Below are positions 6,095-54,744 of a stretch of DNA of 64,000 bases, piece by piece (position 1 is the first letter of the stretch; each line of letters opens with the position of its first letter). Origin of the DNA: Podarcis erhardii. Its lineage: Eukaryota. The position numbers and the translations under genes were made by a program. The notes below the pieces were generated by a model. It did no database searches. It saw only the letters and a program-made list of their open reading frames with translations, and was not told the DNA's origin. Where the stretch lies: the NCBI GenBank assembly GCA_964252035.1, contig OZ176205.1. One strand, written 5' to 3'.

Positions 6095-9000
6095 TAATGT
6101 CAGTTTGCCTGGGTTATCTATGGGCCAGGTCAAAACTGCTTGGTTCTAGATAAAGGGCATTGCTAGGGGGGCTGTACAGAGAGGTCCATGATGGGTCAGG
6201 TGATAGCACTGTTCTAGCAACACTGTTGAGGACTGGTGTTTCAAAGACAAAATACCACAGCTGTCTTCTCCACCCAGTGGCAGCATTCACTTCTCAAAGA
6301 TGTTGTCCCAAACAATGTTTCACCCTCAGATTTTGGCAGAAAGAGATAGGCCAGATCACATGTACCGACACACAGTAATGTTTCATCAAAGCAGGGTCTT
6401 AAAGTTCTCTGTATCCAATCTCCAACAAGAAATAAATTCTGATGGAAGCTCCTGTGGGGATGAACCCTCTACCTTGTGGTTATGTTGGGTCAAAAGTTGA
6501 GATGAAAGCAACTATTTCTTAAACCACATTATTTCTTACTATGCATTTCTCTCCTAATCATCCAGCGCTCTTCAATATCTATCTATTTATCTATCTAGTT
6601 ACCTAGCAGAGATATATAGCCTGTCAATTGTACCTGCCTATGCTGCAATGCTGCATGCAAACTGTGGGAATCACAACCCTAGTTTTCTTGGTCTGTATTA
6701 TTACTTACTTTATGAGGCCTTCTCAACCGATAAATAGTTGCGACAGGATTCATAAATTCTGGGATGATGTGTAAGAGGGGGAGGGGAGGAGGGGGAGTAA
6801 ACAACACTCTTGCCACTTCGCCCCCACAACTGCATTTTGAATTTAAGGGGGGGGGGTATGGCTCTTTGACAGTGACCCATGTATCAGATGATTAGTGGAA
6901 ACTGACTGGAATGACAAATAATAGAAAGACTTGCTCTCTCAGACATCACATTAAGAGACTATTTGACTGGAGCTGTTTTAATGAATTAGACACTTTTCAC
7001 TCTAAATTAAACTAAAATGTGTAGAGAGAAGGAAACTATTTTTCTACTTAATGCAACATGGCTCAATTCCCTGGTTATACTTTTACATAAGCTATACAGT
7101 TTGATTCTTTGGCTATTTTCTTTTTCAACACATTTTGTGTTTTTCTGCGAGTACCTTGGATCCTGGCCTAATTGAATCCATTGAGGTTAGCACTGTTTTG
7201 CTTTAAAATAGAACATAGGGATTGACAACCTTTTTTTACTGTAATATTTTGTATGTTGTTAACAAGCTATTGCTGTGCATTGTTTCATATTGCTACTGTG
7301 TCATAGTCTTGCTCATTGCATATCATTATCTTATTTGAATATAATAAGTGCAGCATGCAGAATACTCACAAGAGAAAATTGGATGCCAATTACAAATATT
7401 TGACAGTGACCTGTATATCTGTAGTCCTGATGCATGAATGAAAGTTTATAGCATACAAACCTACAAAACAAACTTACCTGTCATCTCATTCCACAAAAGT
7501 TGCATAAAATGCTGCACTTTCAGATTATCAGTGAATATAACTTTATTTGCTTGTTTCTAAAAATAAAATTAAAAAATGTACAAATTTAAGTGTCCCCATC
7601 AGAAGTGACCTCTCGTTTTTTTACCAATAGGAAACTTAGTTCTAGAAGAAAAAGAGGGCTGTGATATGAACATTGTTCTAGCATGAAGAACTGAGAAATG
7701 GACAAATCTTGCTGAAGTCAAAGTTGCCTAGGAAAACCCTATTGCAGATATAAATATTATGCAGTTTGAAGCGACTAGATGCATGGAAACTGACTCCTTT
7801 TGGAAATAAAACATTGTCAAGCCCCGTAAGTTTAATTAAAGCTTTATTTGCAGAACTTTCTTGAAAACAAAATAAAAACATCAAAGATACATTCATATAT
7901 TTCCATAAGACATTTTGCTGCACATTGTGCACAGGCTCAGTATCTTAGAACATATGAAATACTCCAAACAGACCTATAAGCAAAGGTGTCTATCTCTCTA
8001 TAACCTCCATTAGTCTGGAGCTGTTTACCTGGAGAGTCATTTACATCCTTACTCTCACAGAACCTTGGAACAAAGATCTCCAGCCACCACCCTTCCAAGG
8101 TGGCAAATTCAATTCAATACCACTCATGTGATCTAAGGTTAAAAGACCATGCCATTTCTGAGAATAATAACAGTTGATTATCAACCCATCTATGAGCTTG
8201 AATCCAAAGGCACTTTAACATGCAGAGCAGCCCCTCTGAATTCTGTTGACATTCAGCTCATTCGACAGTCCTCCCATGCCTTATCCAACACCTTTCCAGA
8301 AGACCCCTTGACCCTCAGCAAGTTTTGTGGGGAGCAGGGGTCTGTCACAGGGAAGAGAAGCATGTGAAGTCCCAATTGCTTGAGCAGAGTAGCAGACTTC
8401 TGTTTGATCTTCTCTGCATCAACCCTAATGGTTTAATTAACATTTATTGACTTGGCAGTTGACAATATTTTAGACCTTTTTATATATCCCTATGATATAA
8501 TCTTCTGCATGGCTTGAACCATTGCTTCTGAAACAAAAAGCACTTCTTTTGGAACTGACTGCAGAATCTGAGGTTATGTGTCTGATAACAAATTACTGAA
8601 CAAAAAAATCCCTCAGTGTGGAAGCACAGTTAAAAGATTATTTATGTGAATAGCTATATTTTGTTTTTGAATGGGCATGATTTCTAAAGAAGCTTTTAGA
8701 TAGGTAATCTACCTGTGAGGACTTGCTAAGACAACTGGGGAAGGCATTCTTTAGACAATTATCAACACACTCCACTCATAATGGGCTAGTCAACCGGCAT
8801 TCAGCTGTGCCTAGATATAGTTTTCAAAGTTGGTCTTAAATAGGTGGGGCCATTCTTGTTTGGAAATTATTCATTCTGTTGGGATGTGCTTCCACAATTC
8901 AGCAGGGACACTGATCTCTGCATAAAACCAGAGAGTGTCCCCTTCAATTGTATGAAATGGCATTCTATTGATATTTTCATAATCTTCTTAGAATTGCTAT

Positions 9001-20305: not shown

Positions 20306-20433
20306 NNNNNNNNNNNNNNNNNNNNNNNNNNNNNNNNNNNNNNNNNNNNNNNNNNNNNNNNNNNNNNNNNNNNNNNNNNNNNNNNNNNNNNNNNNNNNNN
20401 NNNNNNNNNNNNNNNNNNNNNNNNNNNNNNNNN
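20306..20433. other. Assembly gap (128 N)
   Basis: Run of N. Confidence 1.
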
Positions 20434-44345: not shown

Positions 44346-45419
44346 CTCCCTATAGCTCGTACCCTTACACTTTCCTGTCCAAATTTACCTGGCAATGGCC
44401 ATGGCAGTGCCAGGAAGACCTTATTTTCCTCAACATCTGCCCCAAATCCATTTGCTGCTCCATGCCTTTCTCTCAAAATGAACGTTGGAGTTCCCCCCTG
44501 CAACAATTATGAACAAGGCTCCAGAGGATGACATCACAGAGAGCACAATGAGGTCCAAACAACAATATATGACCAGGGAATACTTACTTCTACTTCCTCT
44601 TCTCATATTTTCCTGGGGCCTTTCTGAAGTAAGCCAAGGATAACTTGTCAGCACCAGTTAAGAAATATGAACAGGCCCATCTGTTCCAGTATCCTATTTT
44701 CACGACAGCCAACCACACTCCTATGGAATGTCCATAAGTAGGACATGAGTGGAAGAGTTCTCTCCCTATGTGTGATCCTCAGATGGTGGTATTGGAACTA
44801 CCATGGCTAGTTAAAGCCCATTCCAATGGCAAATGAATGATGCCAAGATTATACTGGTGTCATCTATTGACCTCTCTCTATCTGAAATATTATCAACACA
44901 CCTGCAAAAAATGCCCTAGATCAACTAGTATATGAAATACTTCCAATAATTTAATTCCTGGACTCAATTCCACACTTCCACTGGCATCCTAATATCAACA
45001 TTGTAAATCCATATAACAGTTGCATCATCTTTACAACATTTTTTCCTCCTTTGGTTAATTATCACCTTGATGCAGCCAGAGGCAAGAACACTATTTTCAC
45101 CTACCTGGGTGGGATGAAGTTAAGCGCAGCCTTGCCACCCTTTTAATATGTGAAGACATTACACAGCTGGCTCTCAGATCATAGCAGAAGGCATTTAGCA
45201 GGAAATGTTTGTCAAATTTGATTTATTTTGTATTATTCAGATTTACAACTTGAAGGCTTTTAAGCTGATATGTGTGAATCCTAGAGAGACATTTAAATAC
45301 CTTCCTCCTGTTTGGAATACTTGTGCTTATGTTCAACTCTGCTTTGGGGAGATCTAGTCTGTAATGTTTTGTTGCTTACACCGTGGACAGTTGTCTTTAA
45401 CAAAATAAGGATATCATGT

Positions 45420-46173
45420 TGTCAGAGCCACCCGAGGTCCCAGCTCACAAGAGACCAAAGTCCAGTCCAAGTTATGTACAAAAGGATTTATTGAAGATCA
45501 TTGTAGCCATTACATCCCAACTCCGTGGCTCCGCATCTGTTACCCTTAGATGTTAGAAGTCCCCTCTGAGTCCGTCCCTCCCCTGCACCAATTTAAGAGG
45601 CTTGTACTGCTCCACCTTTTCCTCTCTTTCCTTTTCCGCAGGGTCTTCCTGCCCCCCTGTCTTCCCTCTTTCCGGGACTCCCCAGAGGCTGAGTCTTCTC
45701 CCGCCTGCTCCCCCCTCCTTCGTGCTTTGGCACCAGGCTCCTCCTCAGAGCTCTCCTCATTTCCGCGCGCCTCTATATTTGAACTTGGCGCGCGTACGTT
45801 GCCTCTGACCTTCCTTTCTACAGTTACGCTGCTCTCGGTACTACACTCCTCCCTTTCAGGCAGGACGTCTTGCTCCGAACTCCTCCCCCTTCCTCCTTCC
45901 TGTCCTGCTCTTTCTGACACACTGGCAACTCCCCCCCCTCCACTCCTTTCCGACGGGGGAGCTGGTCCCGCTTTGCCACTCCCACTGAGGATTCCCTCTT
46001 CGTTCCCCTCTTTCTGACTGCTTCCCTCTATATTGCCCCTTGGCCTGACCAGGGGGGCTCCCTTCTGGGAATCCTCTGATTCGCTAGACGGACTTTGGGA
46101 CAACCTCGGCTCGTTGTCGTCCTCTTCCTCCTCGCCCTCGCTCTCTGTCTCCTCTCTCCCTAAAACCCTGACA
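45420..46173 (-). repeat. 3' LTR (754 bp), U3 read through by pol
   Basis: Preceded on the element strand by a polypurine tract. AATAAA at 45492-45487 (minus). The pol stop TAA at 45548-45546 lies inside it. Confidence 0.97.
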
Positions 46174-49100
46174 TCCATCCCCCCCTCGAAGCCCCCCCTT
46201 CCCCCCTTCCGCTCATCGGGTGCAGGTTGTGGAAGCTGCCGCTCTTCGGAGGCGGACGCAGGATACAGATTCTGCACCTCCATCTCCTCTGTTTGCAGTT
46301 CGTTGTACGAGTGTTCGAATTCGGGTTCTTGACCCAAGGTGTTCTCTTCTCCCTCCTCCATTGGTACCTGGTCCGGTGCTGCCTGCCAAGGTCCCGTCAG
46401 CCATTTCCTGCGCCAGTCCTCCTCTGGTTGCTCGTCCCACCAATAAGAGGGTTCTGTGTCCACCCCCGAACACGATCCCCTGGGCGAGTTGGAGTCCGGC
46501 GACCTTTCTTCGGCTGAAGAAAAGCCGTGGAAAGTGCTGCCTGAACATGTGGGCGTAAAGAGCCAGTCATCAAAGTACTCGGCTGGCATGGGTCTATGAG
46601 GGAAAAGGGCATGGAACTCGTCTTTTAAAAGAGGTTCGTCTAAGGCGTAGCCCGGCACCCAACCATTGGCACTGACTGGGGCACCCTCTCTGACTAGAAA
46701 ATATTCTACTCCCTCTTGCCCCCATCTCGAGTCCAGGATCTCTGTGACCTCGTTGAGTGGTTCGGCCCTAGGCGCCCTCTCCCTCTCCTGTGACTTAGTG
46801 TGTTGTTGCGTGACTGTGTCAGACTCCTGAAACCTGTGCGGTGCCTTGTAGGGAGTGAGCACCGATCTATGAAAGACCGGGTGCACTCTGGAACCTTCGG
46901 GGAGGGCTAGTCGAAAGGCTACAGGGTTGATTTTAGCCTCCACCTGGTACGGCCCTAACTGCCTGTGCCCCAGCTTCTTCTTGGCCAACGACTTGGCTGG
47001 CATCGCTTGGGCCGCTAACCACACCCAGTCCCCCACCTGGATCTCCTCTCCCTCTCTCCTGTTTTTGTCAGCCTGCACCTTATATGCTTGCTTGGCCAGC
47101 TCTAAATGTCTCCGCAACTCTTCGTGCACCTCCTGCAGCTCCGCTGCAAACTGGTCGGCTCCTTGCGGCACCCCCTCTCCCGGTGCCACGAACCCCGGGA
47201 AGGTTCTGGGATGACGACCATTGTTCGCGAAAAACGGCGTCACCCCCGTGGACGCGTGCTTCGTGTTGTTATAGGCAAACTCTGCCATCGGCAGGTAGTC
47301 CACCCAAACTGCTGGTCGCTGGTTGGCGTAACATCTCAGGTACTGCTGCATGATCGCGTTGACCCTCTCAGCTTGGCCGTTGGTTTGTGGGTGTCTCGCC
47401 GACGTGAGGTTGATCTTGACGTTCAGGATACCTAAAAGCTTCTGCCAAAAATTGGAAACAAACTGGCGCCCCCTGTCGGACAGGATGGACTGCGGCAGCC
47501 CATGCACCTTGAACACGTGATCGATGAAGAGTTTGGCAGTCTGTTCCGCCGTCGCCACCTTTGCGCATGGAATGAAGTGCGCCATCTTGGTGAACAGGTC
47601 CACAACCACCAGTACCGCCGTCTTCCCCCTGGAGCTGGGCAGGTCAGTAACGAAGTCCAGAGCTACCCTCTCCCACGGTTGCTGTGGCGTTTCCAGCGGT
47701 TCCAACAGCCCCGCTGGCTTCTGGTGTACTGGCTTGAACCTCTGACAAGTGTCACACCTGGCGACGTAATCCGCTACCTCTCCACGCATCCGGGGCCACC
47801 AAAAGTCTCTTGCCACCAGTTCTATTGTCTTCTCCTTACCGAAGTGGCCCGCACTGGGGGCGTCGTGCAACTGCTGCAGAACCTTTGCGCGAAGCTCGTC
47901 GCTTGGCACGTAGAGGGCACCTTTGCGAGTTAGCAGCCCGTCGCGTAGTTGGAACTCTTCGCCACTCTGCACACCTCTGCGCAATTCCTCCATCTTGGAC
48001 TGTGCGAACTGATCCACTTGCAACGCGCGTCGCACCGCGTCCAGATCTACTGTGGCGGCAGCGCACGACCACGCCTGCGGTGCGAAAATGTGCTTGGCTG
48101 CTACAGGCGCCGCTTCATCGAGATATTGCGGTTTCCTGGATAGCGCATCGGCTATAACGTTGGAATCTCCTGGGACGTACTCTATCTGAAAGTCGAAATC
48201 CGCGAAGAATTCCGCCCAGCGCATGTGCCTCTGGCTTTGGAGCTTCGCCGTGCGCCAATACTCTAGGTTCTTGTGATCCGTGCGGACCTGTACTGTGTGC
48301 TTGGCTCCTATGAGGAAGTGTCGCCACGCTTTGAAAGCTGCGTGAATGGCTAACAGCTCCCTGTCCCATATGGTGTAGTTTTGCTCCGCTTTGCTGAGCT
48401 TTCTGGAGTAAAAGGCACCGGGTCTCCAGTTGCCATGTGGATCTTCTTGCAGGAGTACGGCTCCAACTGCTCTGTCTGACGCGTCGGTCTCTACTCGCAT
48501 GGGCTTGCCTGGATTCACGTGCAGCAGCTGCTCCTCGGAGGCGAAAAGGCTTTTAAGCTTCCGAAAAGAGCGCTCTGCCTGTTCCGTCCACACGAACCTC
48601 TTCTTCTTGGAACTCAGAGTGTCCGTGATCGCTGCCGTCTCCTTTGCAAAACCTCTGATGAATTTGCGGTAGAAGTTGGCGAAGCCGATGAATCTCTGGA
48701 CTTCCTTCCGATTGCGGGGGCTCTTCCAGTCCAACACCGCGCGGACCTTGGCGCTGTCCATGGCCAGCCCCTTGTCGGACAGCTTGTAGCCTAGGAAATC
48801 CACCTCCGTCACATCAAACTGGCACTTCTCTAACTTGGCGTAGAGCCTGTTCTCCCGTAGTCTTTGCAGGACTTCCTTTACGTCCTTCTCATGGGCCTCC
48901 TCCGTTTCCGAAAAGATCAGGATGTCGTCGAGGAAACACACGCATTTCTTGTAGAGAAGTCCCGCTAGCACGTGATGCATAAAGGCTTGGAAGACGTGAG
49001 ATCCATTTTGGAGACCAAATGGCATAACTCTGTATTCATACGTGCCCAGAGGCGTGAACATGGCCGTCTTCCACTCATCGCCCTCCCGGATGCGTATGAG

Positions 49101-50057
49101 GTTATACGCTCCACGCAGATCCAACTTGGTGAAGATCTTCCCCTTCCTTACGGTTGCCAGGAGATCATCTATCTTGGGCATGGGGAAGGCCTTGGGCTTG
49201 GTCATACTGTTTATGGACCTATAGTCCACAATAAGTCTTTTTTGGGGCGTGTCCTTTTTCTTTACAAAGAAAACAGGACTGCCCCCCACCGCTTTCGATT
49301 CCCGGATGAATCCGCGCTGCAAATTGTGCTCTATGAACTCCCTGAGCTCTTGCATCTCGTCCTCAGACATGGAATACAGCTTTGCAGTCGGCAACTGCGC
49401 CCCTGGCACCAGGTCGATGGCACAATCATAGGGTCTGTGGGGCGGCAACTGGTCAGCTTCCTTCTCGCAGAAAACCTCCAGGAACCCTTCGTACTTGCTA
49501 GGTACTGCCTGCACCATGCCCAGTCGCAGCTGCTGCTCAGCCCCCTCCTCCTGGCACGACTGGATGCAGTTTTGAGCACAGTACGATGAGCAAAAGGTGA
49601 TCTGGCGTTGGTACCACGCTACAGCAGGACTGTGTCTCTCCAGCCAACTCATGCCCAATACTATAGGCGTGTCAGACAGGTGGGTGACATTGAAGCTAAT
49701 GACTTCCCGGTGATCTCCAATCCGCATCACCATGGGAGGCGTCTGATGCACCACTTGCCCTCCAAGCAATTTCCTGCCATCCACCGTGACTACGTTCAGA
49801 GGTGTTGTGGCTGGCAGAAGCGCTATGCGATGCTGCTTGACAAATTGCATCCCCACGAAATCGGCGTTGCTCCCGGAATCGATCGTGAGGGGCACTTCTA
49901 TGGGGGTCCCATCTGGCAACTGCAGTGTTGCGGTGAGCTGCACTGCTGGCTTGGGTGGTAAAGGGTCTGTAGGTTGCAAAAATGCTGAGGACTGTTCTAC
50001 AGATCCGCCTGGCTGAGCCCCAGCATTTGTGCTTCCAGCCAGGCATTGCCGTTTCCC
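45546..50057 (-). CDS. pol: Pol polyprotein (protease, RT, RNase H, integrase, chromodomain, long acidic C-terminal tail), expressed by -1 frameshift
   Basis: No internal stops in the ORF track (45546-50174). Motifs: IDSGS protease, KLDLRGAY and FLDD RT, ETDAS RNase H, H-x6-H..C-x2-C zinc finger, LDF/SDRG/QAER DDE, GPY, and chromodomain EVTEILDSR...W.P. Confidence 0.96.
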   Translation of the reverse strand, partial: GKRQCLAGSTNAGAQPGGSVEQSSAFLQPTDPLPPKPAVQLTATLQLPDGTPIEVPLTIDSGSNADFVGMQFVKQHRIALLPATTPLNVVTVDGRKLLGGQVVHQTPPMVMRIGDHREVISFNVTHLSDTPIVLGMSWLERHSPAVAWYQRQITFCSSYCAQNCIQSCQEEGAEQQLRLGMVQAVPSKYEGFLEVFCEKEADQLPPHRPYDCAIDLVPGAQLPTAKLYSMSEDEMQELREFIEHNLQRGFIRESKAVGGSPVFFVKKKDTPQKRLIVDYRSINSMTKPKAFPMPKIDDLLATVRKGKIFTKLDLRGAYNLIRIREGDEWKTAMFTPLGTYEYRVMPFGLQNGSHVFQAFMHHVLAGLLYKKCVCFLDDILIFSETEEAHEKDVKEVLQRLRENRLYAKLEKCQFDVTEVDFLGYKLSDKGLAMDSAKVRAVLDWKSPRNRKEVQRFIGFANFYRKFIRGFAKETAAITDTLSSKKKRFVWTEQAERSFRKLKSLFASEEQLLHVNPGKPMRVETDASDRAVGAVLLQEDPHGNWRPGAFYSRKLSKAEQNYTIWDRELLAIHAAFKAWRHFLIGAKHTVQVRTDHKNLEYWRTAKLQSQRHMRWAEFFADFDFQIEYVPGDSNVIADALSRKPQYLDEAAPVAAKHIFAPQAWSCAAATVDLDAVRRALQVDQFAQSKMEELRRGVQSGEEFQLRDGLLTRKGALYVPSDELRAKVLQQLHDAPSAGHFGKEKTIELVARDFWWPRMRGEVADYVARCDTCQRFKPVHQKPAGLLEPLETPQQPWERVALDFVTDLPSSRGKTAVLVVVDLFTKMAHFIPCAKVATAEQTAKLFIDHVFKVHGLPQSILSDRGRQFVSNFWQKLLGILNVKINLTSARHPQTNGQAERVNAIMQQYLRCYANQRPAVWVDYLPMAEFAYNNTKHASTGVTPFFANNGRHPRTFPGFVAPGEGVPQGADQFAAELQEVHEELRRHLELAKQAYKVQADKNRREGEEIQVGDWVWLAAQAMPAKSLAKKKLGHRQLGPYQVEAKINPVAFRLALPEGSRVHPVFHRSVLTPYKAPHRFQESDTVTQQHTKSQERERAPRAEPLNEVTEILDSRWGQEGVEYFLVREGAPVSANGWVPGYALDEPLLKDEFHALFPHRPMPAEYFDDWLFTPTCSGSTFHGFSSAEERSPDSNSPRGSCSGVDTEPSYWWDEQPEEDWRRKWLTGPWQAAPDQVPMEEGEENTLGQEPEFEHSYNELQTEEMEVQNLYPASASEERQLPQPAPDERKGGRGGFEGGMDVRVLGREETESEGEEEEDDNEPRLSQSPSSESEDSQKGAPLVRPRGNIEGSSQKEGNEEGILSGSGKAGPAPPSERSGGGGVASVSERAGQEGGRGRSSEQDVLPEREECSTESSVTVERKVRGNVRAPSSNIEARGNEESSEEEPGAKARRRGEQAGEDSASGESRKEGRQGGRKTLRKRKERKRWSSTSLLNWCRGGTDSEGTSNI
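46174..46187 (-). promoter_or_regulatory. Polypurine tract
   Basis: GAGGGGGGGATGGA immediately precedes TGTCAG of the 3' LTR on the element strand, with further G/A tracts upstream. Confidence 0.85.
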
Positions 50058-50815
50058 TGAGGCTCCTCTTCTTGGGTCACTTCTGCTGCTACCGTTGCTA
50101 AAGCTGCAGTGTGCTTCTGGAGCCTCTGGGGACACTCTTTCGCCATGTGCAGTGCACTGTCGCAGATGTAACACTTCCTGGTCCCTCTAGGAGGCTTCGC
50201 CTTCACTGCACCGGAAGCCGGGGCTCTGGCTGTTGCTTGAGCCTTAGCACCACCAAGTTCCATCGGCTCCTCCCCCTGCCTGCCCAGCGGCGAGGGATGT
50301 GACTGACTGAACTCCCTGGGGATGAAAGAAGACGTCCTCGCTGGTGGACGCACCTGCCGTTCTTCCTCATTGTGCCAAAGACGCCCCTCGTGCCTTATCC
50401 CAATCGATAAAGCCCTCTGCACAAGTTCCTCCAGGGTCTGAGGTCTGTCTCCCCTGGCAAGTTCATTCTTAATGGGACCGCTGAGACCCTCCCAGAACAA
50501 ATCCCTCACTTTCTCCTCCTCATCTTTAAAGTCATGACGAAGCAAGTGCAATGCATACAAAACGTCTGCTTTGAAACTGGGATAATGCTTCAGGTTCCCA
50601 TCGAAGTGGGTGACTAGGCTGCCCCCCCTCCTTCCAAGTCCAATTCCCTCTGATCTGGACCCTGGGAACCCTTCCCTGCTTGCACGCTCCCACCTTGTTT
50701 GCAGGTCTTGGCAGCGCTTCTCCATTTCGTCATGCTTCTTCTGAGACGCAAGGACTGCAGCTGTGAGTTCGGACACTGTATTCCGCAGCGCTGTCAGCTG
50801 ATCCTCCGCACTCAT
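49997..50815 (-). CDS. gag: Gag (coiled-coil N-terminus, partial capsid, CCHC zinc knuckle); probably internally deleted
   Basis: ATG at 50815 in a GCC-ATG context (the track starts at an upstream TTG). Contains FDGN..F motif, FWEGLS, PMELG and zinc knuckle CYICDSALHMAKEC, all typical of sushi/PEG10-like Gag. Confidence 0.92.
   Translation of the reverse strand: MSAEDQLTALRNTVSELTAAVLASQKKHDEMEKRCQDLQTRWERASREGFPGSRSEGIGLGRRGGSLVTHFDGNLKHYPSFKADVLYALHLLRHDFKDEEEKVRDLFWEGLSGPIKNELARGDRPQTLEELVQRALSIGIRHEGRLWHNEEERQVRPPARTSSFIPREFSQSHPSPLGRQGEEPMELGGAKAQATARAPASGAVKAKPPRGTRKCYICDSALHMAKECPQRLQKHTAALATVAAEVTQEEEPQGNGNAWLEAQMLGLSQADL
50007..50057 (-). promoter_or_regulatory. Programmed -1 ribosomal frameshift signal (G GGA AAC plus downstream stem-loop)
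   Basis: Slippery heptamer at 50057-50051 in gag phase, with pol in the -1 frame. A 9-bp perfect stem GCCTGGCTG (50044-50036) / CAGCCAGGC (50015-50007) begins 6 nt downstream. Confidence 0.88.
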
Positions 50816-50867
50816 GGCCGTTACCGTTTGTGAGCTTTGCAAAAAAAAAAAAAATTTGCGTTCTGTG

Positions 50868-50879
50868 GAGGGGACTTTC
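50868..50879 (-). promoter_or_regulatory. Primer-binding site, self-priming type
   Basis: Element strand reads LTR..CA|GA AAGTCCCCTC with no TGG tRNA-type start. It is complementary to GAGGGGACTT in the LTR (51026-51017). Confidence 0.8.
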
Positions 50880-51634
50880 TGTCAGAGCCACCCGAGGTCC
50901 CAGCTCACAAGAGACCAAAGTCCAGTCCAAGTTATGTACAAAAGGATTTATTGAAGATCATTGTAGCCATTACATCCCAACTCCGTGGCTCCGCATCTGT
51001 TACCCTTAGATGTTAGAAGTCCCCTCTGAGTCCGTCCCTCCCCTGCACCAATTTAAGAGGCTTGTACTGCTCCACCTTTTCCTCTCTTTCCTTTTCCGCA
51101 GGGTCTTCCTGCCCCCCTGTCTTCCCTCTTTCCGGGACTCCCCAGAGGCTGAGTCTTCTCCCGCCTGCTCCCCCCTCCTTCGTGCTTTGGCACCAGGCTC
51201 CTCCTCAGAGCTCTCCTCATTTCCGCGCGCCTCTATATTTGAACTTGGCGCGCGTACGTTGCCTCTGACCTTCCTTTCTACAGTTACGCTGCTCTCGGTA
51301 CTACACTCCTCCCTTTCAGGCAGGACGTCTTGCTCCGAACTCCTCCCCCTTCCTCCTTCCTGTCCTGCTCTTTCTGACACACTGGCAACTCCCCCCCCCT
51401 CCACTCCTTTCCGACGGGGGAGCTGGTCCCGCTTTGCCACTCCCACTGGGGATTCCCTCTTCGTTCCCCTCTTTCTGACTGCTTCCCTCTCTATTGCCCC
51501 TTGGCCTGACCAGGGGGGCTCCCTTCTGGGAATCCTCTGATTCGCTAGACGGACTTTGGGACAACCTCGGCTCGTTGTCGTCCTCTTCCTCCTCGCCCTC
51601 GCTCTCTGTCTCCTCTCTCCCTAAAACCCTGACA
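50880..51634 (-). repeat. 5' LTR (755 bp)
   Basis: TG...CA ends with 6-bp inverted repeat, adjacent to the PBS and gag start. Differs from the 3' LTR by one extra C in a C-run near 51391-51399 and substitutions at 51449 and 51491. Confidence 0.97.
50947..51056 (-). promoter_or_regulatory. LTR core promoter/R region: TATA-like TTAAAT, predicted TSS about 51026, AATAAA
   Basis: TTAAAT at 51056-51051 lies 25-30 nt upstream of the self-priming sequence. AATAAA at 50952-50947. Confidence 0.6.
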
Positions 51635-51923
51635 CATGTGAAACAAACAAATTTCCTGCAGTGCATTTATATCTATTTTCATATTAGAATACATTTGTCA
51701 TTATTAAGCGTTATCATTTGAAAGCTAAAGTTAACATATTATAGGTGTTAGACGAGAATCTGATTTGACAGAACAAAACAAAAAAACTTGCCATCAAATC
51801 TGTGGTGGCACCTTTCCACTCTTTTATTTTAAAAAATAAATCTGTACCCCAAATTTCAGCTGCAGGGGTGGGGAGAAACATGTCCCAATGTGTCTTATTT
51901 CCATAAAGCAAAAAGAAGGAATA

Positions 51924-52143
51924 TAGTGGTACCTCGGGTTAAGAACTTAATTTGTTCTGGATGTCTTAACCTGAAATTGTTCTTAACCTGAAGCACCACT
52001 TTAGCTAACAGGCCTCCTGCTGCCGCTGCGCCGCTGCTGCACGATTTCTGTTCTCATCCTGAAGCAAAGTTCTTAACCCGAGGTACTATTTCTGGGTTAG
52101 CGGAGTCTGTAACCTGAAGTGTATGTAACCCGAGGTACTACCG
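51924..52143 (+). mobile_element. CAGTGGTACCTCGGGTT-family MITE
   Basis: Slightly mutated TIRs, TA flanks, same interior as the other copies. Confidence 0.88.
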
Positions 52144-52743
52144 TAAATGAAATACAACAAAAACAATGAAAAAGTGGGTAAATGTGGCACCAGCTATCAA
52201 CCAGCATGCCATCATAACAGATCAATCTTATGTTGAGTGTGTACATAGCTCTAGGGAGAGAATTCCAAAGATACGGGGCCAACAGTGAAAAGGCTATGTG
52301 TGAGGGTAAAAAATTAGCTGGGGAATAAAGTTTCATCACCTTTTACACCCCTGCTGTGTGAATGTGTGTGCATGTTTTTGAAGATCATGAAAGTCACACA
52401 TTTACATGGTCTCCCCTTGCACCTCACAGGTCGGTTTCCACTTTGTTTTCTTAGTCCTAACTATAGTTCATGGTGTTTTCCAAGCTATTCCCCCTCCAAA
52501 TGGCTTTGCTTCCAATTCTCCAAGCCATGCTTTGGAGTGTTGTCTGAATTGTGCCAGTGTCTGAGTTGGCAAATACAACATGCTCAGCAAGAAGAATATA
52601 GACACCTCTTTTATCTACAGATGTTTAGAGATATGACACAGGTTTGAAAGTGAGGAGTGCCTTACATAGCAGAGGCTGAGATGTGCAGTAGCGTGAGGAG
52701 AAGAAAAGGGTTTCAAGAAAACAGGAAAAGTCAGAAAATGCAT

Positions 52744-53180
52744 TGTAATGGGGTTGGGGGTTGCTTGTGCGTAAGGCGCAAACTGCTCCAAGCTGAGTAG
52801 TTTGGTTAAAACTTTCCCCTGGCTGGACAGTCAGTACTCCGTGACTGTCTCAAACACTGGCAGAATCCGTCAGTGGGCGTTTCCTGAATTTCCTCCAACA
52901 TAAAAGTTCTTTGACACCAAGTCGTCGCCTAGCTTCCCTGCGCGGAAGCTTTCTGCGCAGAGTGGGCGTCCCAAGGGGAGGTCCTGTGCTCTCCCCGCTG
53001 GTCTCGCTGGAACAGTCCCAGAGCCTTTCCTCCGAAGCTCCCTCAGCCCCCTCTTTCTCCCTGGCATCACGTCTATTTCCTTCCCCAGCGGAAGCTCTCC
53101 CTCTCTCCTTGCTGGTTCCCTCTCCAGCATCATTGGGGAGCCTTACCACCACCCTTGGCTCCGATGGCAGTTCCCTGACA
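52744..53180 (-). mobile_element. Solo LTR of a related but divergent Gypsy family (437 bp)
   Basis: TG...CA ends, with the element strand starting TGTCAGGG as in the full element. Near-perfect 5-bp TSD TGCAT (52739-52743) / TGCAC (53181-53185). Purine-rich U3. Confidence 0.85.
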
Positions 53181-53290
53181 TGCACAATATCATTTAGATA
53201 AATATCTGGATAGAGAAGTTACGGAGCCATTAGGCCCCCAGACCTGAGGTTCTCCACTCCTGGTTTAATTCTGTCTTATATTCATTTTCA

Positions 53291-53981
53291 GAGGGGCAGA
53301 TAGGGCTCATCAACCTGGGAAGGTAGCCCATCTAGGAGAAGAAAAACTCTGATCCTAAACCTCTGCTGCCTTGTAGGATATCTTCAGGAGAAGAAAAGGC
53401 TAAGGAGTAAACCCCACACAAATCTGGAGTAGAGTTTCTAAGATGGTTGGATGACACCTTGTACTCATCCCGTCAACGTCTGTAACCAAGCTGTTCCCAG
53501 ATGTATTGCTCTGCTTTCCCTTGGACCACATCAGTGAGGCTGAGAGCAGGGACATAGAAAGGGGGGTGCAGTGGAGGCGACCAGCCCCAGGTGTCATCTC
53601 AGAGAGGGGTGACCAAATCTCCACTGCACGGATTGCCACAGTGCCGTGATCAGCCTGGGCGGATTGCGCCGCCGACATGTGAATGGCCCCTGGGATGGAT
53701 TGTGCAGCCACGCCGATCGCCCACGTGAGTGGATTACCCTGCCCCTTGGCAGATTGCCCAACCCCCATGGTGCATGGCATGTGCACCACTCCGGGTGCCC
53801 GAGCGGCTAGCTCTGCCACTGGCTGAGAGGGGGTCTTATTATCTGGGCAGCCTCGGACCTCCAGACACACTGCCCAAGCTTGCTCCCTGAGGAGCTCATT
53901 TCAGTGTTGCTAATGCAGCGGTTTGACTTCACCCCTGGAGGCACACTCCATTGTCTCTCAAAACAGATGGATGCCAAGAAC
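53291..53981. mobile_element. Interspersed repeat, probably non-LTR-retrotransposon-derived (RTE/Vingi-like), host of the hAT insertion
   Basis: Recognised from memory of a lizard repeat consensus in which the two flanks are contiguous once the insertion and one TSD copy are removed. Family assignment uncertain. Confidence 0.45.
53547..53821. mobile_element. hAT-type non-autonomous element nested in another repeat
   Basis: Exact 8-bp TSD GCTGAGAG (53539-53546, 53822-53829); imperfect CAG-G-CA-AG termini; GC-rich interior. Confidence 0.75.
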
Positions 53982-54744
53982 ATTCACCTCTCAACTTCTT
54001 TTCCACCACCCAGTGCACATTTTTAAGAGAGTTATTGCTGTAAATTCTTCAATTAAAGCAAATAGCTCCTTCTGCATCAAAGTTGTAGTTCTGTAAAATG
54101 TACAGTTCCATTTTCATTGGCTATATAGCGCTCCAGAGAGACATGTACCCTGTTGCTTGCACTTAGTCATGCCTTAGGAACCCAGAAGCAACAGCATTAT
54201 CATCAGGCAAGTTGGTAATTAAACCTGCAACTTCAGTGGGGTACAAACTTTGTCATGCCCCACGATAATGGCATTGGGGTGAATCATGTCGTTTCAAAAG
54301 AAAAGCTTCTGGAGTAGATTGAGTTCTAAAATAATATGACTGTGACTTCAGGGCCAATGTGCAGGTTATTTTATTGTAGCCAGAAGTAGCAAAACAGAAT
54401 TCAGTTACACTGTCGGCTGCTGGACAAAGAAACAATAAAGACCATTCCCCTATTTTTTTTAGAAATCATAAAATCTAGCAGGTTCGTACTATGAAAGCCA
54501 GTTTATGAACTCTACCTAGTAGTTTCCTTCCAGCCTTTCTCTGCTTCAGTGCTGTCATCTAGAGCCGAGACATTTTTTCAGAAAGAATTTTTGTTCCTGA
54601 TAAAATGTCTGAGCTTTTCCTTTTCCTCACTCCCTTAGAAAAAGAAGGCGACTTTGCAGAATTGTCTCCAACTATTTCCCACCATTTTCCCCCCTGAAGC
54701 AGTTGCTATATCCCCCTCAGTGCCATGTAATTAATGTAAGGCCA

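What the first reader, a model, noticed from the sequence alone, without database searches (positions are those of the whole stretch)
45546..46590. Pol reads about 345 codons beyond the chromodomain, through the PPT and about 209 codons into the 3' LTR
Seen: no stop occurs between the chromodomain (ends about 46590) and TAA at 45548-45546 inside the R region, which lies upstream of the AATAAA so the whole tail would be on the mRNA. The tail is E/S/G/R-rich and looks disordered, with acidic blocks (ETESEGEEEEDDNE) and a basic end (RKTLRKRKERKRW). Established: chromovirus Pol usually terminates shortly after the chromodomain, before the PPT, and C-terminal integrase tails of Ty1, Ty5 and MLV carry NLS or host-tethering motifs. 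Inference: this is an integrase fused to an LTR-encoded intrinsically disordered tail that may handle nuclear import or targeting, so U3 would be both promoter/enhancer and coding sequence.
Basis: partly seen in the sequence, partly recalled or inferred. Interest (0 to 1): 0.75.

Follow-up and report, generated by a model that had tools for sequence, protein, structure and literature searches.

The report
LTR-encoded tail on lizard chromovirus integrase
In a young lizard retrotransposon the pol gene runs past its chromodomain, through the polypurine tract and 208 codons into the 3' LTR, and related copies show this tail is a selected protein, a layout known from plant centromeric retrotransposons but which I did not find described in vertebrates.

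Summary
A full-length Ty3/gypsy chromovirus lies on the minus strand at 45420-51634. Its LTRs are 754 and 755 bp and differ at three places; the target-site duplication is ACATG. The pol frame stays open for 347 codons after a degenerate chromodomain, crosses the polypurine tract, and reads 208 codons into the 3' LTR. It stops at 45546-45548, 54 nt before a conserved AATAAA.

This is neither chance (shuffles P <= 5e-5) nor a private read-through. Thirteen Podarcis proteins from three subfamilies, 46-71% identical to this tail, run to the same last residues. All aligned LTRs have the stop at the same place.

On frame-blind DNA alignments the LTR-encoded part has dN/dS of 0.20-0.40, with confidence intervals below 1. 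The other two sense frames give 0.7-2.5. Indels between intact copies keep the frame. So most of the LTR, including all of U3, also encodes protein.

Two other squamate families also read into the LTR: an element in Rhineura (87 codons) and a solo LTR in this window (111 codons). The function of the tail (nuclear import or chromatin tethering) is only inferred, and the U3/R boundary is unmapped.

The scan reached the same reading before, on another piece of this genome (s1-224428). Verdict: new variant of a known kind.

The parts
45420..51634 (-). Full-length Ty3/gypsy chromovirus-type LTR retrotransposon, flanked by the 5-bp duplication ACATG (45415-45419 and 51635-51639)
   Evidence: LTR alignment and flanks. 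Pfam domain order is RVP_2, RVT_1, RT_RNaseH, Integrase_H2C2, rve, SH3_Tf2-1.
50880..51634 (-). 5' LTR, 755 bp, TGTCAGGG...CTCTGACA. Relative to the 3' LTR it carries one extra G in a poly-G run.
   Evidence: A very high-depth public contig matches the 3' LTR without any indel over 45670-46173.
45420..46173 (-). 3' LTR, 754 bp. Its first 625 nt (46173 down to 45549), 83% of the LTR, are read in the pol frame.
49997..50842 (-). gag-like ORF. It overlaps the start of the pol frame by 178 nt, and pol is in the -1 frame relative to it.
   Evidence: weak zf-CCHC match; the frame relation follows from the coordinates.
45546..50174 (-). pol ORF, 1542 codons plus the stop
46611..46751 (-). Degenerate chromodomain. 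It aligns to the chromodomains of related families but lacks all three aromatic cage residues.
   Evidence: Pfam Chromo E 0.014, below the cut-off; alignment A4.
46174..46589 (-). Part of the tail before the LTR (139 codons). Invariant aromatic motifs include FDDWLFTPT and SYWWD..PEE.WR.
   Evidence: Alignment A2; dN/dS 0.27-0.38 with confidence intervals below 1.
46174..46210 (-). Polypurine tract, translated as a Gly/Arg-rich peptide ending in GGMD
   Evidence: It sits directly upstream of the LTR start in all 3' copies.
45549..46173 (-). LTR-encoded part of the tail (208 codons)
   Evidence: dN/dS 0.20-0.40 in the pol frame against 0.66-2.8 in the other two sense frames. Differences at third positions exceed those at first and second positions in every block except the first 12 codons.
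46053..46091 (-). Acidic serine motif PSSESEDSQKGAP, the most strongly protein-constrained block of the LTR part
   Evidence: Differences at codon positions 1+2 are 0.02 against 0.47 at position 3. The tail has 16 [ST]xx[DE] sites against about 3 expected from the core.
45612..45650 (-). Basic cluster RKTLRKRKERKRW, followed by the conserved LL.WC..G.DS motif near the C-terminus
45546..45548 (-). pol stop codon TAA, at the same aligned LTR position in all subfamilies
45487..45492 (-). AATAAA poly(A) signal, conserved in all aligned LTRs, 54 nt downstream of the stop
45931..45938 (-). Poly-G run of 8 G here and 9 G in the 5' LTR. It is a frameshift-prone homopolymer inside the coding part.

Best explanation
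This is a young, structurally complete chromovirus of a lacertid lizard; its closest relatives are in Podarcis. Its Pol (integrase end) carries a C-terminal extension of about 350 residues. The extension is low in hydrophobic residues and rich in Glu, Ser, Gly and Arg. It starts right after a chromodomain that has lost its aromatic cage. It is translated straight through the polypurine tract and across 83% of the 3' LTR, and it stops 54 nt before the poly(A) signal. Whatever part of the LTR upstream of the stop is U3 is therefore promoter DNA and coding sequence at once.

Shown: the layout; its conservation across at least three subfamilies and two or more Podarcis species; and purifying selection on the encoded protein.

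Inferred: the whole frame lies on the genomic RNA, because the 3' LTR is transcribed as far as the conserved AATAAA. The tail stays attached to integrase and works through short linear motifs: aromatic blocks, an acidic serine cluster, and a terminal basic cluster followed by LL.WC. These would serve nuclear import and/or chromatin tethering, perhaps making up for the lost methyl-lysine cage. I put about 0.9 on 'selected, LTR-encoded Pol tail' and about 0.4 on the import/tethering function.
For: Anatomy.

Not chance: shuffles give P <= 5e-5 for the whole tail and 2.5e-4 for the LTR part.

Not private to this copy: 13 of 27 Podarcis proteins that contain the start of the tail align along its whole length, or to within two residues of its end, and finish at their own C-terminus. 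They are 46-49% (clusters 1 and 3) and about 70% (cluster 2) identical to this tail.

DNA copies: all 12 aligned LTRs start with TGTCAGGG, and the stop is at the same aligned position wherever that part of the LTR is present. The frame is intact in 5 of 10 complete LTRs; the others are broken by 1-2 nt indels, mostly in G runs.

Selection: dN/dS is 0.055-0.09 in the core. In the LTR part it is 0.20-0.40, with bootstrap intervals of 0.13-0.65. In the part before the LTR it is 0.27-0.38. The other two sense frames of the same frame-blind alignments give 0.66-2.8. Third-position excess is seen, for example 28/43/79 differences by codon position. For the SSESEDSQKGA block, differences are 0.02 at positions 1+2 against 0.47 at position 3.

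Indels: none in 209 codons among three subfamilies up to about 24% divergent. Against a copy with 87% identity the indels are 3, 15 and 15 nt.

Independent families with the same layout and the same codon phase at the LTR start: a Rhineura element with both LTRs, reading 87 codons into the LTR, and the solo LTR at 52850-53180 that matches the tail of P0052.

Composition lies on the disordered side of the charge-hydropathy boundary (mean normalised hydropathy 0.350 against a boundary of 0.443), whereas the core lies on the folded side.
Against: There is no transcript, ribosome-profiling or peptide evidence: no RNA run holds the stretch, and the laid runs are contigs only. The U3/R boundary is unknown.

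The AlphaFold model has pLDDT 40.6 and did not fold even the chromodomain, so it says nothing about disorder.

The antisense frame that shares wobble positions also shows low dN/dS (0.24-0.54) and few stops.

All six differences between this 3' LTR and the abundant public contig fall on codon positions 1 or 2. That fits neutral decay after insertion, but it gives no support for selection within the subfamily.

The basic cluster does not match the strict K[KR]x[KR] pattern for a nuclear localisation signal. No Pfam family or solved relative exists for the tail.
Confidence: 0.8

Rival explanations
1. The tail is an accessory protein rather than a working part of integrase. It would be released from Pol by the element's protease, or made from a subgenomic or spliced RNA, in the way retroviral accessory genes overlap U3.
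For: The selection tests show that a protein is maintained, not that it stays attached to integrase. A Met-Pro pair is invariant at the start of the tail, and a Met is invariant at the junction of the polypurine tract and the LTR. The tail evolves about five times faster than the core, as accessory modules often do.
Against: The frame is continuous with pol in every intact copy, with no intervening stop. The invariant Met at the junction sits in DNA that is constrained as polypurine tract and LTR terminus: positions 1+2 differ by 0.12 and position 3 by 0.14. No splice or cleavage evidence was obtainable.
Confidence: 0.15
2. The conserved open frame reflects an antisense gene on the + strand (ORF 45550-46017 and its equivalents), and the pol-sense frame is merely its mirror.
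For: The wobble-matched antisense frame has dN/dS 0.24-0.54 and 0-1 stops per LTR coding part in the copies with an intact sense frame. For the closest pair its dN/dS (0.236) is as low as the sense value (0.249).
Against: The sense frame has no stop in all intact copies, while the antisense frame has a stop in the 3' LTR of this window and in three other copies. Sense dN/dS is lower in 3 of 4 pairs (0.20/0.21/0.34 against 0.33/0.29/0.54). The sense frame is continuous with pol, shares its stop position across subfamilies, and shows the same signature in the 139 codons before the LTR. A mirror signal in this antisense frame is expected for any sense ORF.
Confidence: 0.04
3. The frame is a chance or copy-specific read-through in purine-rich LTR DNA that has few stop codons, or it is kept open only by DNA-level constraints (promoter or enhancer).
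For: The sense strand has only 13.5% T, and other frames reach open runs of 117-155 codons. Half of the LTR copies carry frameshifts.
Against: Shuffles give P <= 5e-5. The same frame and stop are kept in subfamilies with only 46-49% identity in the tail. Third-position excess and dN/dS of 0.2-0.4 are seen only in the pol phase and its antisense mirror. Indels keep the frame.
Confidence: 0.02

Closest known systems
Plant CRM-clade chromoviruses (group A, CR motif) and the Beta vulgaris Beetle/Bingo elements
   Same: The gag-pol ORF runs through the polypurine tract into the 3' LTR, so the LTR encodes the C-terminal putative targeting module of integrase (PMC3605345 sections 5, 7 and 15; PMC3059260 figure 4).
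   Different: In CRM the chromodomain-derived CR motif itself lies downstream of the polypurine tract. Here the chromodomain lies 139 codons upstream of it, and the LTR encodes an unrelated low-complexity tail of 208 codons. The host is a lizard, and the nearest Pol relatives are vertebrate chromoviruses.
Other squamate chromovirus families found here (Rhineura floridana element L006; the Podarcis P0052/P0053 family and the solo LTR at 52850-53180; probably Anolis P0063/P0071, Podarcis P0064 and contig L004)
   Same: Pol reads through a G-rich polypurine tract into an LTR that starts TGTCA, in the same codon phase. The tail has an acidic Ser/Asp/Glu cluster near the LTR start and a basic C-terminus.
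   Different: Those tails have about 15 codons between the chromodomain and the polypurine tract and 87-115 codons in the LTR, and most keep cage aromatics in the chromodomain. Profile comparison of the tails is not significant (hhalign E 0.047, probability 1%), so homology of the tails is not established.
C-terminal integrase tails of Ty1, Ty5 and MLV (nuclear localisation signal or host-tethering motifs)
   Same: A C-terminal extension that looks disordered (by composition only), with short conserved motifs and a basic cluster, downstream of the catalytic core and SH3-like domain. This comparison rests on my own knowledge of those systems.
   Different: Those tails are encoded upstream of the 3' LTR. 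No sequence similarity was found and no binding partner was tested.
Retroviral genes that overlap U3 of the 3' LTR (HIV nef, MMTV sag, foamy virus bel/bet)
   Same: U3 is both regulatory DNA and coding sequence (my own knowledge).
   Different: Those are separate ORFs expressed from spliced or internal-promoter RNAs. Here the frame is the end of pol itself.

Membership tests
Chromovirus (Ty3/gypsy, Metaviridae) | LTRs with TG...CA ends and a target-site duplication | tested here: met
   LTRs of 754 and 755 bp, TGTCAGGG...CTCTGACA, duplication ACATG
Chromovirus (Ty3/gypsy, Metaviridae) | Domain order PR-RT-RNase H-IN, with the Tf2-type SH3 domain | tested here: met
   Pfam RVP_2, RVT_1, RT_RNaseH, Integrase_H2C2, rve and SH3_Tf2-1, all above their cut-offs
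Chromovirus (Ty3/gypsy, Metaviridae) | Chromodomain at the C-terminus of integrase | tested here: inconclusive
   Pfam Chromo scores 15.7 bits against a cut-off of 25.1. The segment aligns column by column with the chromodomains of related families, whose proteins carry precomputed PF00385 hits, but all three cage positions are non-aromatic. The AlphaFold model is too poor to test the fold.
CRM-type LTR-encoded targeting domain (plants) | The polyprotein ORF passes the polypurine tract and ends inside the 3' LTR | tested here: met
   208 codons inside the LTR
CRM-type LTR-encoded targeting domain (plants) | The CR motif or chromodomain lies downstream of the polypurine tract, inside the LTR | tested here: not met
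   The chromodomain ends 139 codons upstream of the polypurine tract
CRM-type LTR-encoded targeting domain (plants) | Membership of the plant CRM RT/IN clade | tested here: not met
   The best hits for the integrase region are Podarcis, then Festucalex, Rhineura, Anolis and frogs. Plant hits are 36-37% identical. No tree was built.
Integrase tails with a nuclear localisation signal or tethering motif (Ty1, Ty5, MLV) | A defined motif that binds importin or a chromatin factor | not testable with these tools
   A basic cluster is present, but the strict K[KR]x[KR] pattern is absent. No vertebrate partner can be submitted to the complex predictor.
Accessory ORFs overlapping U3 (nef, sag, bel type) | A separate ORF with its own start and its own RNA | tested here: not met
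   The frame is continuous with pol, without a stop, in all intact copies. RNA species were not testable.

The most novel reading that the evidence does not exclude
In a whole clade of squamate (possibly tetrapod) chromoviruses, the LTR is a dual-use module. Its U3 is a promoter and also encodes a fast-evolving, disordered integrase tail made of exchangeable chromatin-tethering and import motifs. Some neighbouring families even end in an HMGN-like RRSAR(L/I) nucleosome-binding motif. In the family found in this window, that tail has grown to 347 residues and has taken over targeting from a chromodomain that lost its methyl-lysine cage. Promoter and targeting specificity would then be inherited and would diversify together, and every solo LTR would scatter a ready-made ORF across the genome.
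Probability: 0.3. Interest if true: 0.75.

Novelty: new variant of a known kind. Interest (0 to 1): 0.55.

Why it matters
The finding shows that a stretch of about 625 nt can be held under two constraints at once: LTR promoter function and a selected protein. This occurs in a vertebrate retrotransposon family that is young and very abundant.

It offers a concrete candidate for how these elements choose where to integrate. The candidate is a set of short conserved motifs in a fast-evolving tail, in a family whose chromodomain can no longer read methyl-lysine in the usual way.

It also bears on annotation. Pol models that are cut off at the LTR boundary miss a quarter of the integrase region, and solo LTRs of these families will appear as orphan ORFs in lizard gene sets. 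Several Podarcis 'hypothetical proteins' found here are exactly that.

Tried and rejected
- Chance or composition: rejected by shuffles and by stop counts in the other frames.
- DNA-only constraint: rejected by the codon-position pattern.
- Antisense gene: considered and judged to be a mirror signal.
- Other copies in the window: blastn and tblastn with this element found none. The solo LTR at 52850-53180 appeared only when the tails of sister-family proteins were used as queries.
- DNA for P0001: not on record.
- Pfam on the tail and on four other tails: nothing.
- Profile search of 1.84 billion representative proteins: 5 hits, all Podarcis or unnamed Logan contigs, so no host-gene origin is detectable.
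- AlphaFold on chromodomain plus tail with 10 sequences: pLDDT 40.6, uninformative. I therefore ran no fold search.
- RNA evidence: no RNA run found. The laid runs were contigs and could show neither starts nor ends.
- Homology between the tails of the two Podarcis families: not significant.
- Rhineura protein P0066: the protein model is truncated before the chromodomain, but its locus settled the question.
- Literature: three searches found no description of pol reading into the LTR in vertebrate chromoviruses. That is a limit of the library, not proof of absence.
- Complex prediction: not run, because no vertebrate partner can be supplied.
Full report
**The element.** The window holds one full-length LTR retrotransposon on the minus strand, at 45420-51634 (6215 bp). 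Its LTRs are at 45420-46173 (3') and 50880-51634 (5'). Both start TGTCAGGG and end CTCTGACA, and they are flanked by the 5-bp duplication ACATG. The LTRs differ by two substitutions and by one G in a poly-G run, so the insertion is young. Pfam finds protease, RT, RNase H, integrase zinc finger, integrase core and the Tf2-type SH3 domain in the 1542-codon pol frame. A gag-like ORF overlaps the start of that frame in the 0/-1 arrangement. The element has 52-58% G+C in a genome of about 40%.

**The observation.** It holds in every detail that can be checked.
- After a weak chromodomain (Pfam Chromo E 0.014, below the cut-off), the pol frame stays open for 347 more codons.
- The first 139 of these lie before the LTR and include the polypurine tract at 46174-46210. 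The last 208 lie inside the 3' LTR.
- The stop is at 45546-45548, and AATAAA follows at 45487-45492.
- The other two sense frames of the same stretch have 9 and 7 stops.
- In dinucleotide-preserving shuffles the frame stayed open this long in at most 1 of 20000 trials for the whole tail and 5 of 20000 for the LTR part.
- I could not check that the stop lies in R. No RNA run holds the stretch, and the public runs I could lay were contigs.

**Is it ancestral or a private read-through?** I compared copies one by one and built no consensus.
- A word-based protein search with the tail found four clusters of Podarcis muralis 'Gypsy retrotransposon integrase-like' proteins. Their members include Podarcis lilfordi proteins.
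- Of the 27 proteins that contain the start of the tail, none stops directly after the chromodomain. Thirteen align along the whole tail, or to within two residues of its end, and finish at their own C-terminus. They are 46-49% identical (clusters 1 and 3) or about 70% identical (cluster 2), while their integrase cores are 82-90% identical to this copy.
- Two genomic loci gave DNA for several nested elements: Podarcis muralis OZ076972.1 and Podarcis lilfordi OX395130.1.
- All 12 aligned LTRs begin with TGTCAGGG, and the pol stop is at the same aligned position wherever that part of the LTR is present.
- The pol-phase frame is intact in 5 of 10 complete LTRs. In the rest it is broken by 1-2 nt indels, mostly in G runs.
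- A 504-nt public contig of very high depth covers 45670-46173 with six substitutions and no indel, so the frame of the 3' LTR is the abundant state. Both substitutions between the two LTRs of this copy are private to the 3' LTR, and the extra G is private to the 5' LTR.

**Is the frame selected as protein?** I used pairwise DNA alignments made without regard to frame.
- The LTR-encoded part gives Nei-Gojobori dN/dS of 0.20, 0.21 and 0.25 among three subfamilies, and 0.40 against a copy with 87% identity. Bootstrap 95% intervals run from 0.13 to 0.65.
- The other two sense frames of the same alignments give 0.66-2.8.
- Differences pile up on third codon positions, for example 28/43/79 by position.
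- In 12-codon blocks, the SSESEDSQKGA block differs by 0.02 at positions 1+2 and by 0.47 at position 3. Similar contrasts hold for SGPA.PPE, EPGPKARR and the C-terminal LL.WC..G.DS block.
- Only the first 12 LTR codons are equally conserved at all positions, as expected for the LTR terminus.
- The 139 codons before the LTR give 0.27-0.38. The enzymatic core gives 0.055-0.09.
- There is no indel in 209 codons among subfamilies up to about 24% divergent. Against the 87% copy the indels are 3, 15 and 15 nt.
- The + strand ORF at 45550-46017 lies in the antisense frame that shares wobble positions with pol. It therefore mirrors the signal (dN/dS 0.24-0.54). It has stops in four copies and a higher dN/dS in three of four pairs, so I read it as a mirror.

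**How far does the layout extend?**
- A profile of the tail, searched against 1.84 billion representative proteins, returned only five hits. All are Podarcis or unnamed short contigs, and none resembles a host gene.
- Among 87 more distant chromovirus Pols that reach the end of the chromodomain, the median number of residues after it is 14. Squamate and some amphibian relatives, however, carry tails of 55-194 residues.
- Two of these could be checked on DNA. In a Rhineura floridana element with both LTRs (573 bp, 98.4% identical), an uninterrupted pol frame passes a G-rich polypurine tract and reads 87 codons into an LTR that starts TGTCATGG.
- In this window, 52850-53180 (minus strand) is an LTR of a sister Podarcis family. 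It starts TGTCAGGG directly after AT-rich sequence that is not a polypurine tract. It keeps a 111-codon frame that matches the last 116 residues of P0052 at 48% identity (E 5.6e-21).
- In all three families the first T of the LTR is the third base of a codon.
- The tails share an architecture: a Gly/Arg peptide from the polypurine tract, an acidic Ser/Asp/Glu cluster, a variable middle and a basic end. Profile comparison of the two Podarcis tails is not significant, however.

**What is special about this family.** It has 139 extra codons between the chromodomain and the polypurine tract, the longest LTR-encoded part (208 codons, 83% of the LTR), and a chromodomain in which all three positions that are aromatic in relatives are Asn, Arg/Lys and Ala/Thr/Phe. 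That these three positions form the methyl-lysine cage is established knowledge about chromodomains; I did not test it here.

**Mechanism.** The coding layout and the selection on it are shown. The rest is inferred. The whole frame should be on the genomic RNA, because the conserved AATAAA lies downstream of the stop. The tail looks disordered by composition, with mean hydropathy 0.350 against a boundary of 0.443, whereas the core falls on the folded side. The AlphaFold model is too poor to add anything. The conserved blocks look like short linear motifs. The 9-basic-of-13 cluster near the end is like a nuclear localisation signal but does not fit the strict pattern. By analogy with the integrase tails of Ty1, Ty5 and MLV (my own knowledge), I favour nuclear import and/or chromatin tethering, at about 0.4. 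A separately acting accessory protein remains possible, at about 0.15.

**Comparison with what is known.** Pol reading through the polypurine tract into the 3' LTR is described for plant CRM group A elements, whose CR motif is LTR-encoded, and for Beetle and Bingo elements of Beta vulgaris (PMC3605345, PMC3059260). This element works like those but is not a member of that clade. Its chromodomain is upstream of the polypurine tract, and its relatives are vertebrate chromoviruses. Three literature searches found no description of this layout in vertebrates. An earlier follow-up in this scan, on another piece of the same genome, reached the same reading (s1-224428). My tests were made independently on this window and agree with it.

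**Verdict.** This is a new variant of a known kind, of moderate interest.

Noticed in passing
window 52850-53180 (minus strand): An LTR, solo or 5', of a sister chromovirus family. It starts TGTCAGGG at 53180 after AT-rich flank and keeps a 111-codon frame in the pol-equivalent phase. That frame matches the C-terminal 116 residues of the Podarcis muralis protein P0052 (48% identity, E 5.6e-21). I did not determine where this LTR ends or its target-site duplication.
   Followed up: partly
P0064 (Podarcis) and P0063/P0071 (Anolis carolinensis), C-termini: The tails after the chromodomain in these families end in PRRSARLKA and SRRSARIAAK. These resemble the HMGN nucleosome-binding core RRSARLSA (PMC12487698). 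Pfam finds nothing there. This is a lead that LTR-encoded tails may carry motifs that bind the nucleosome acidic patch.
   Followed up: partly
L006:9593-15120 (Rhineura floridana CM057609.1): A chromovirus with 573-bp LTRs (98.4% identical), a canonical chromodomain and an uninterrupted pol frame that ends 87 codons inside the 3' LTR with a basic C-terminus. It lies inside a locus whose other called gene carries an FGF domain.
   Followed up: partly
L004:4400-4738 (Logan contig of SRR6291288): Another chromovirus contig in which a tract resembling the polypurine tract (ending GGGGGGATGG) is followed by TGTTGTGG, and the pol frame runs on for 104 codons to a basic RRRW-type end. The LTR boundary is only inferred, because the contig has no second LTR.
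   Followed up: partly
window 45550-46017 (+ strand): A 155-codon ORF antisense to the LTR-encoded tail, in the frame that shares wobble positions with pol. I read it as a mirror of the sense ORF.
   Followed up: yes
L001 (Podarcis muralis OZ076972.1), whole locus: A nest of at least four elements or LTRs of this family within 21 kb. It includes an element interrupted inside its chromodomain by an inverted LTR of the same family (about 8338-8927), and an NCBI gene model (XP_077779006.1) stitched from element pieces.
   Followed up: partly
window 20306-20433: A run of 128 N (assembly gap or masked). I left it untouched.
   Followed up: no
window 51635-54000: The flank upstream of the element has about 50% G+C against about 40% for the rest of the window. 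It contains the sister-family LTR and a 156-codon ORF at 53400-53870 (minus strand) of unknown nature.
   Followed up: no
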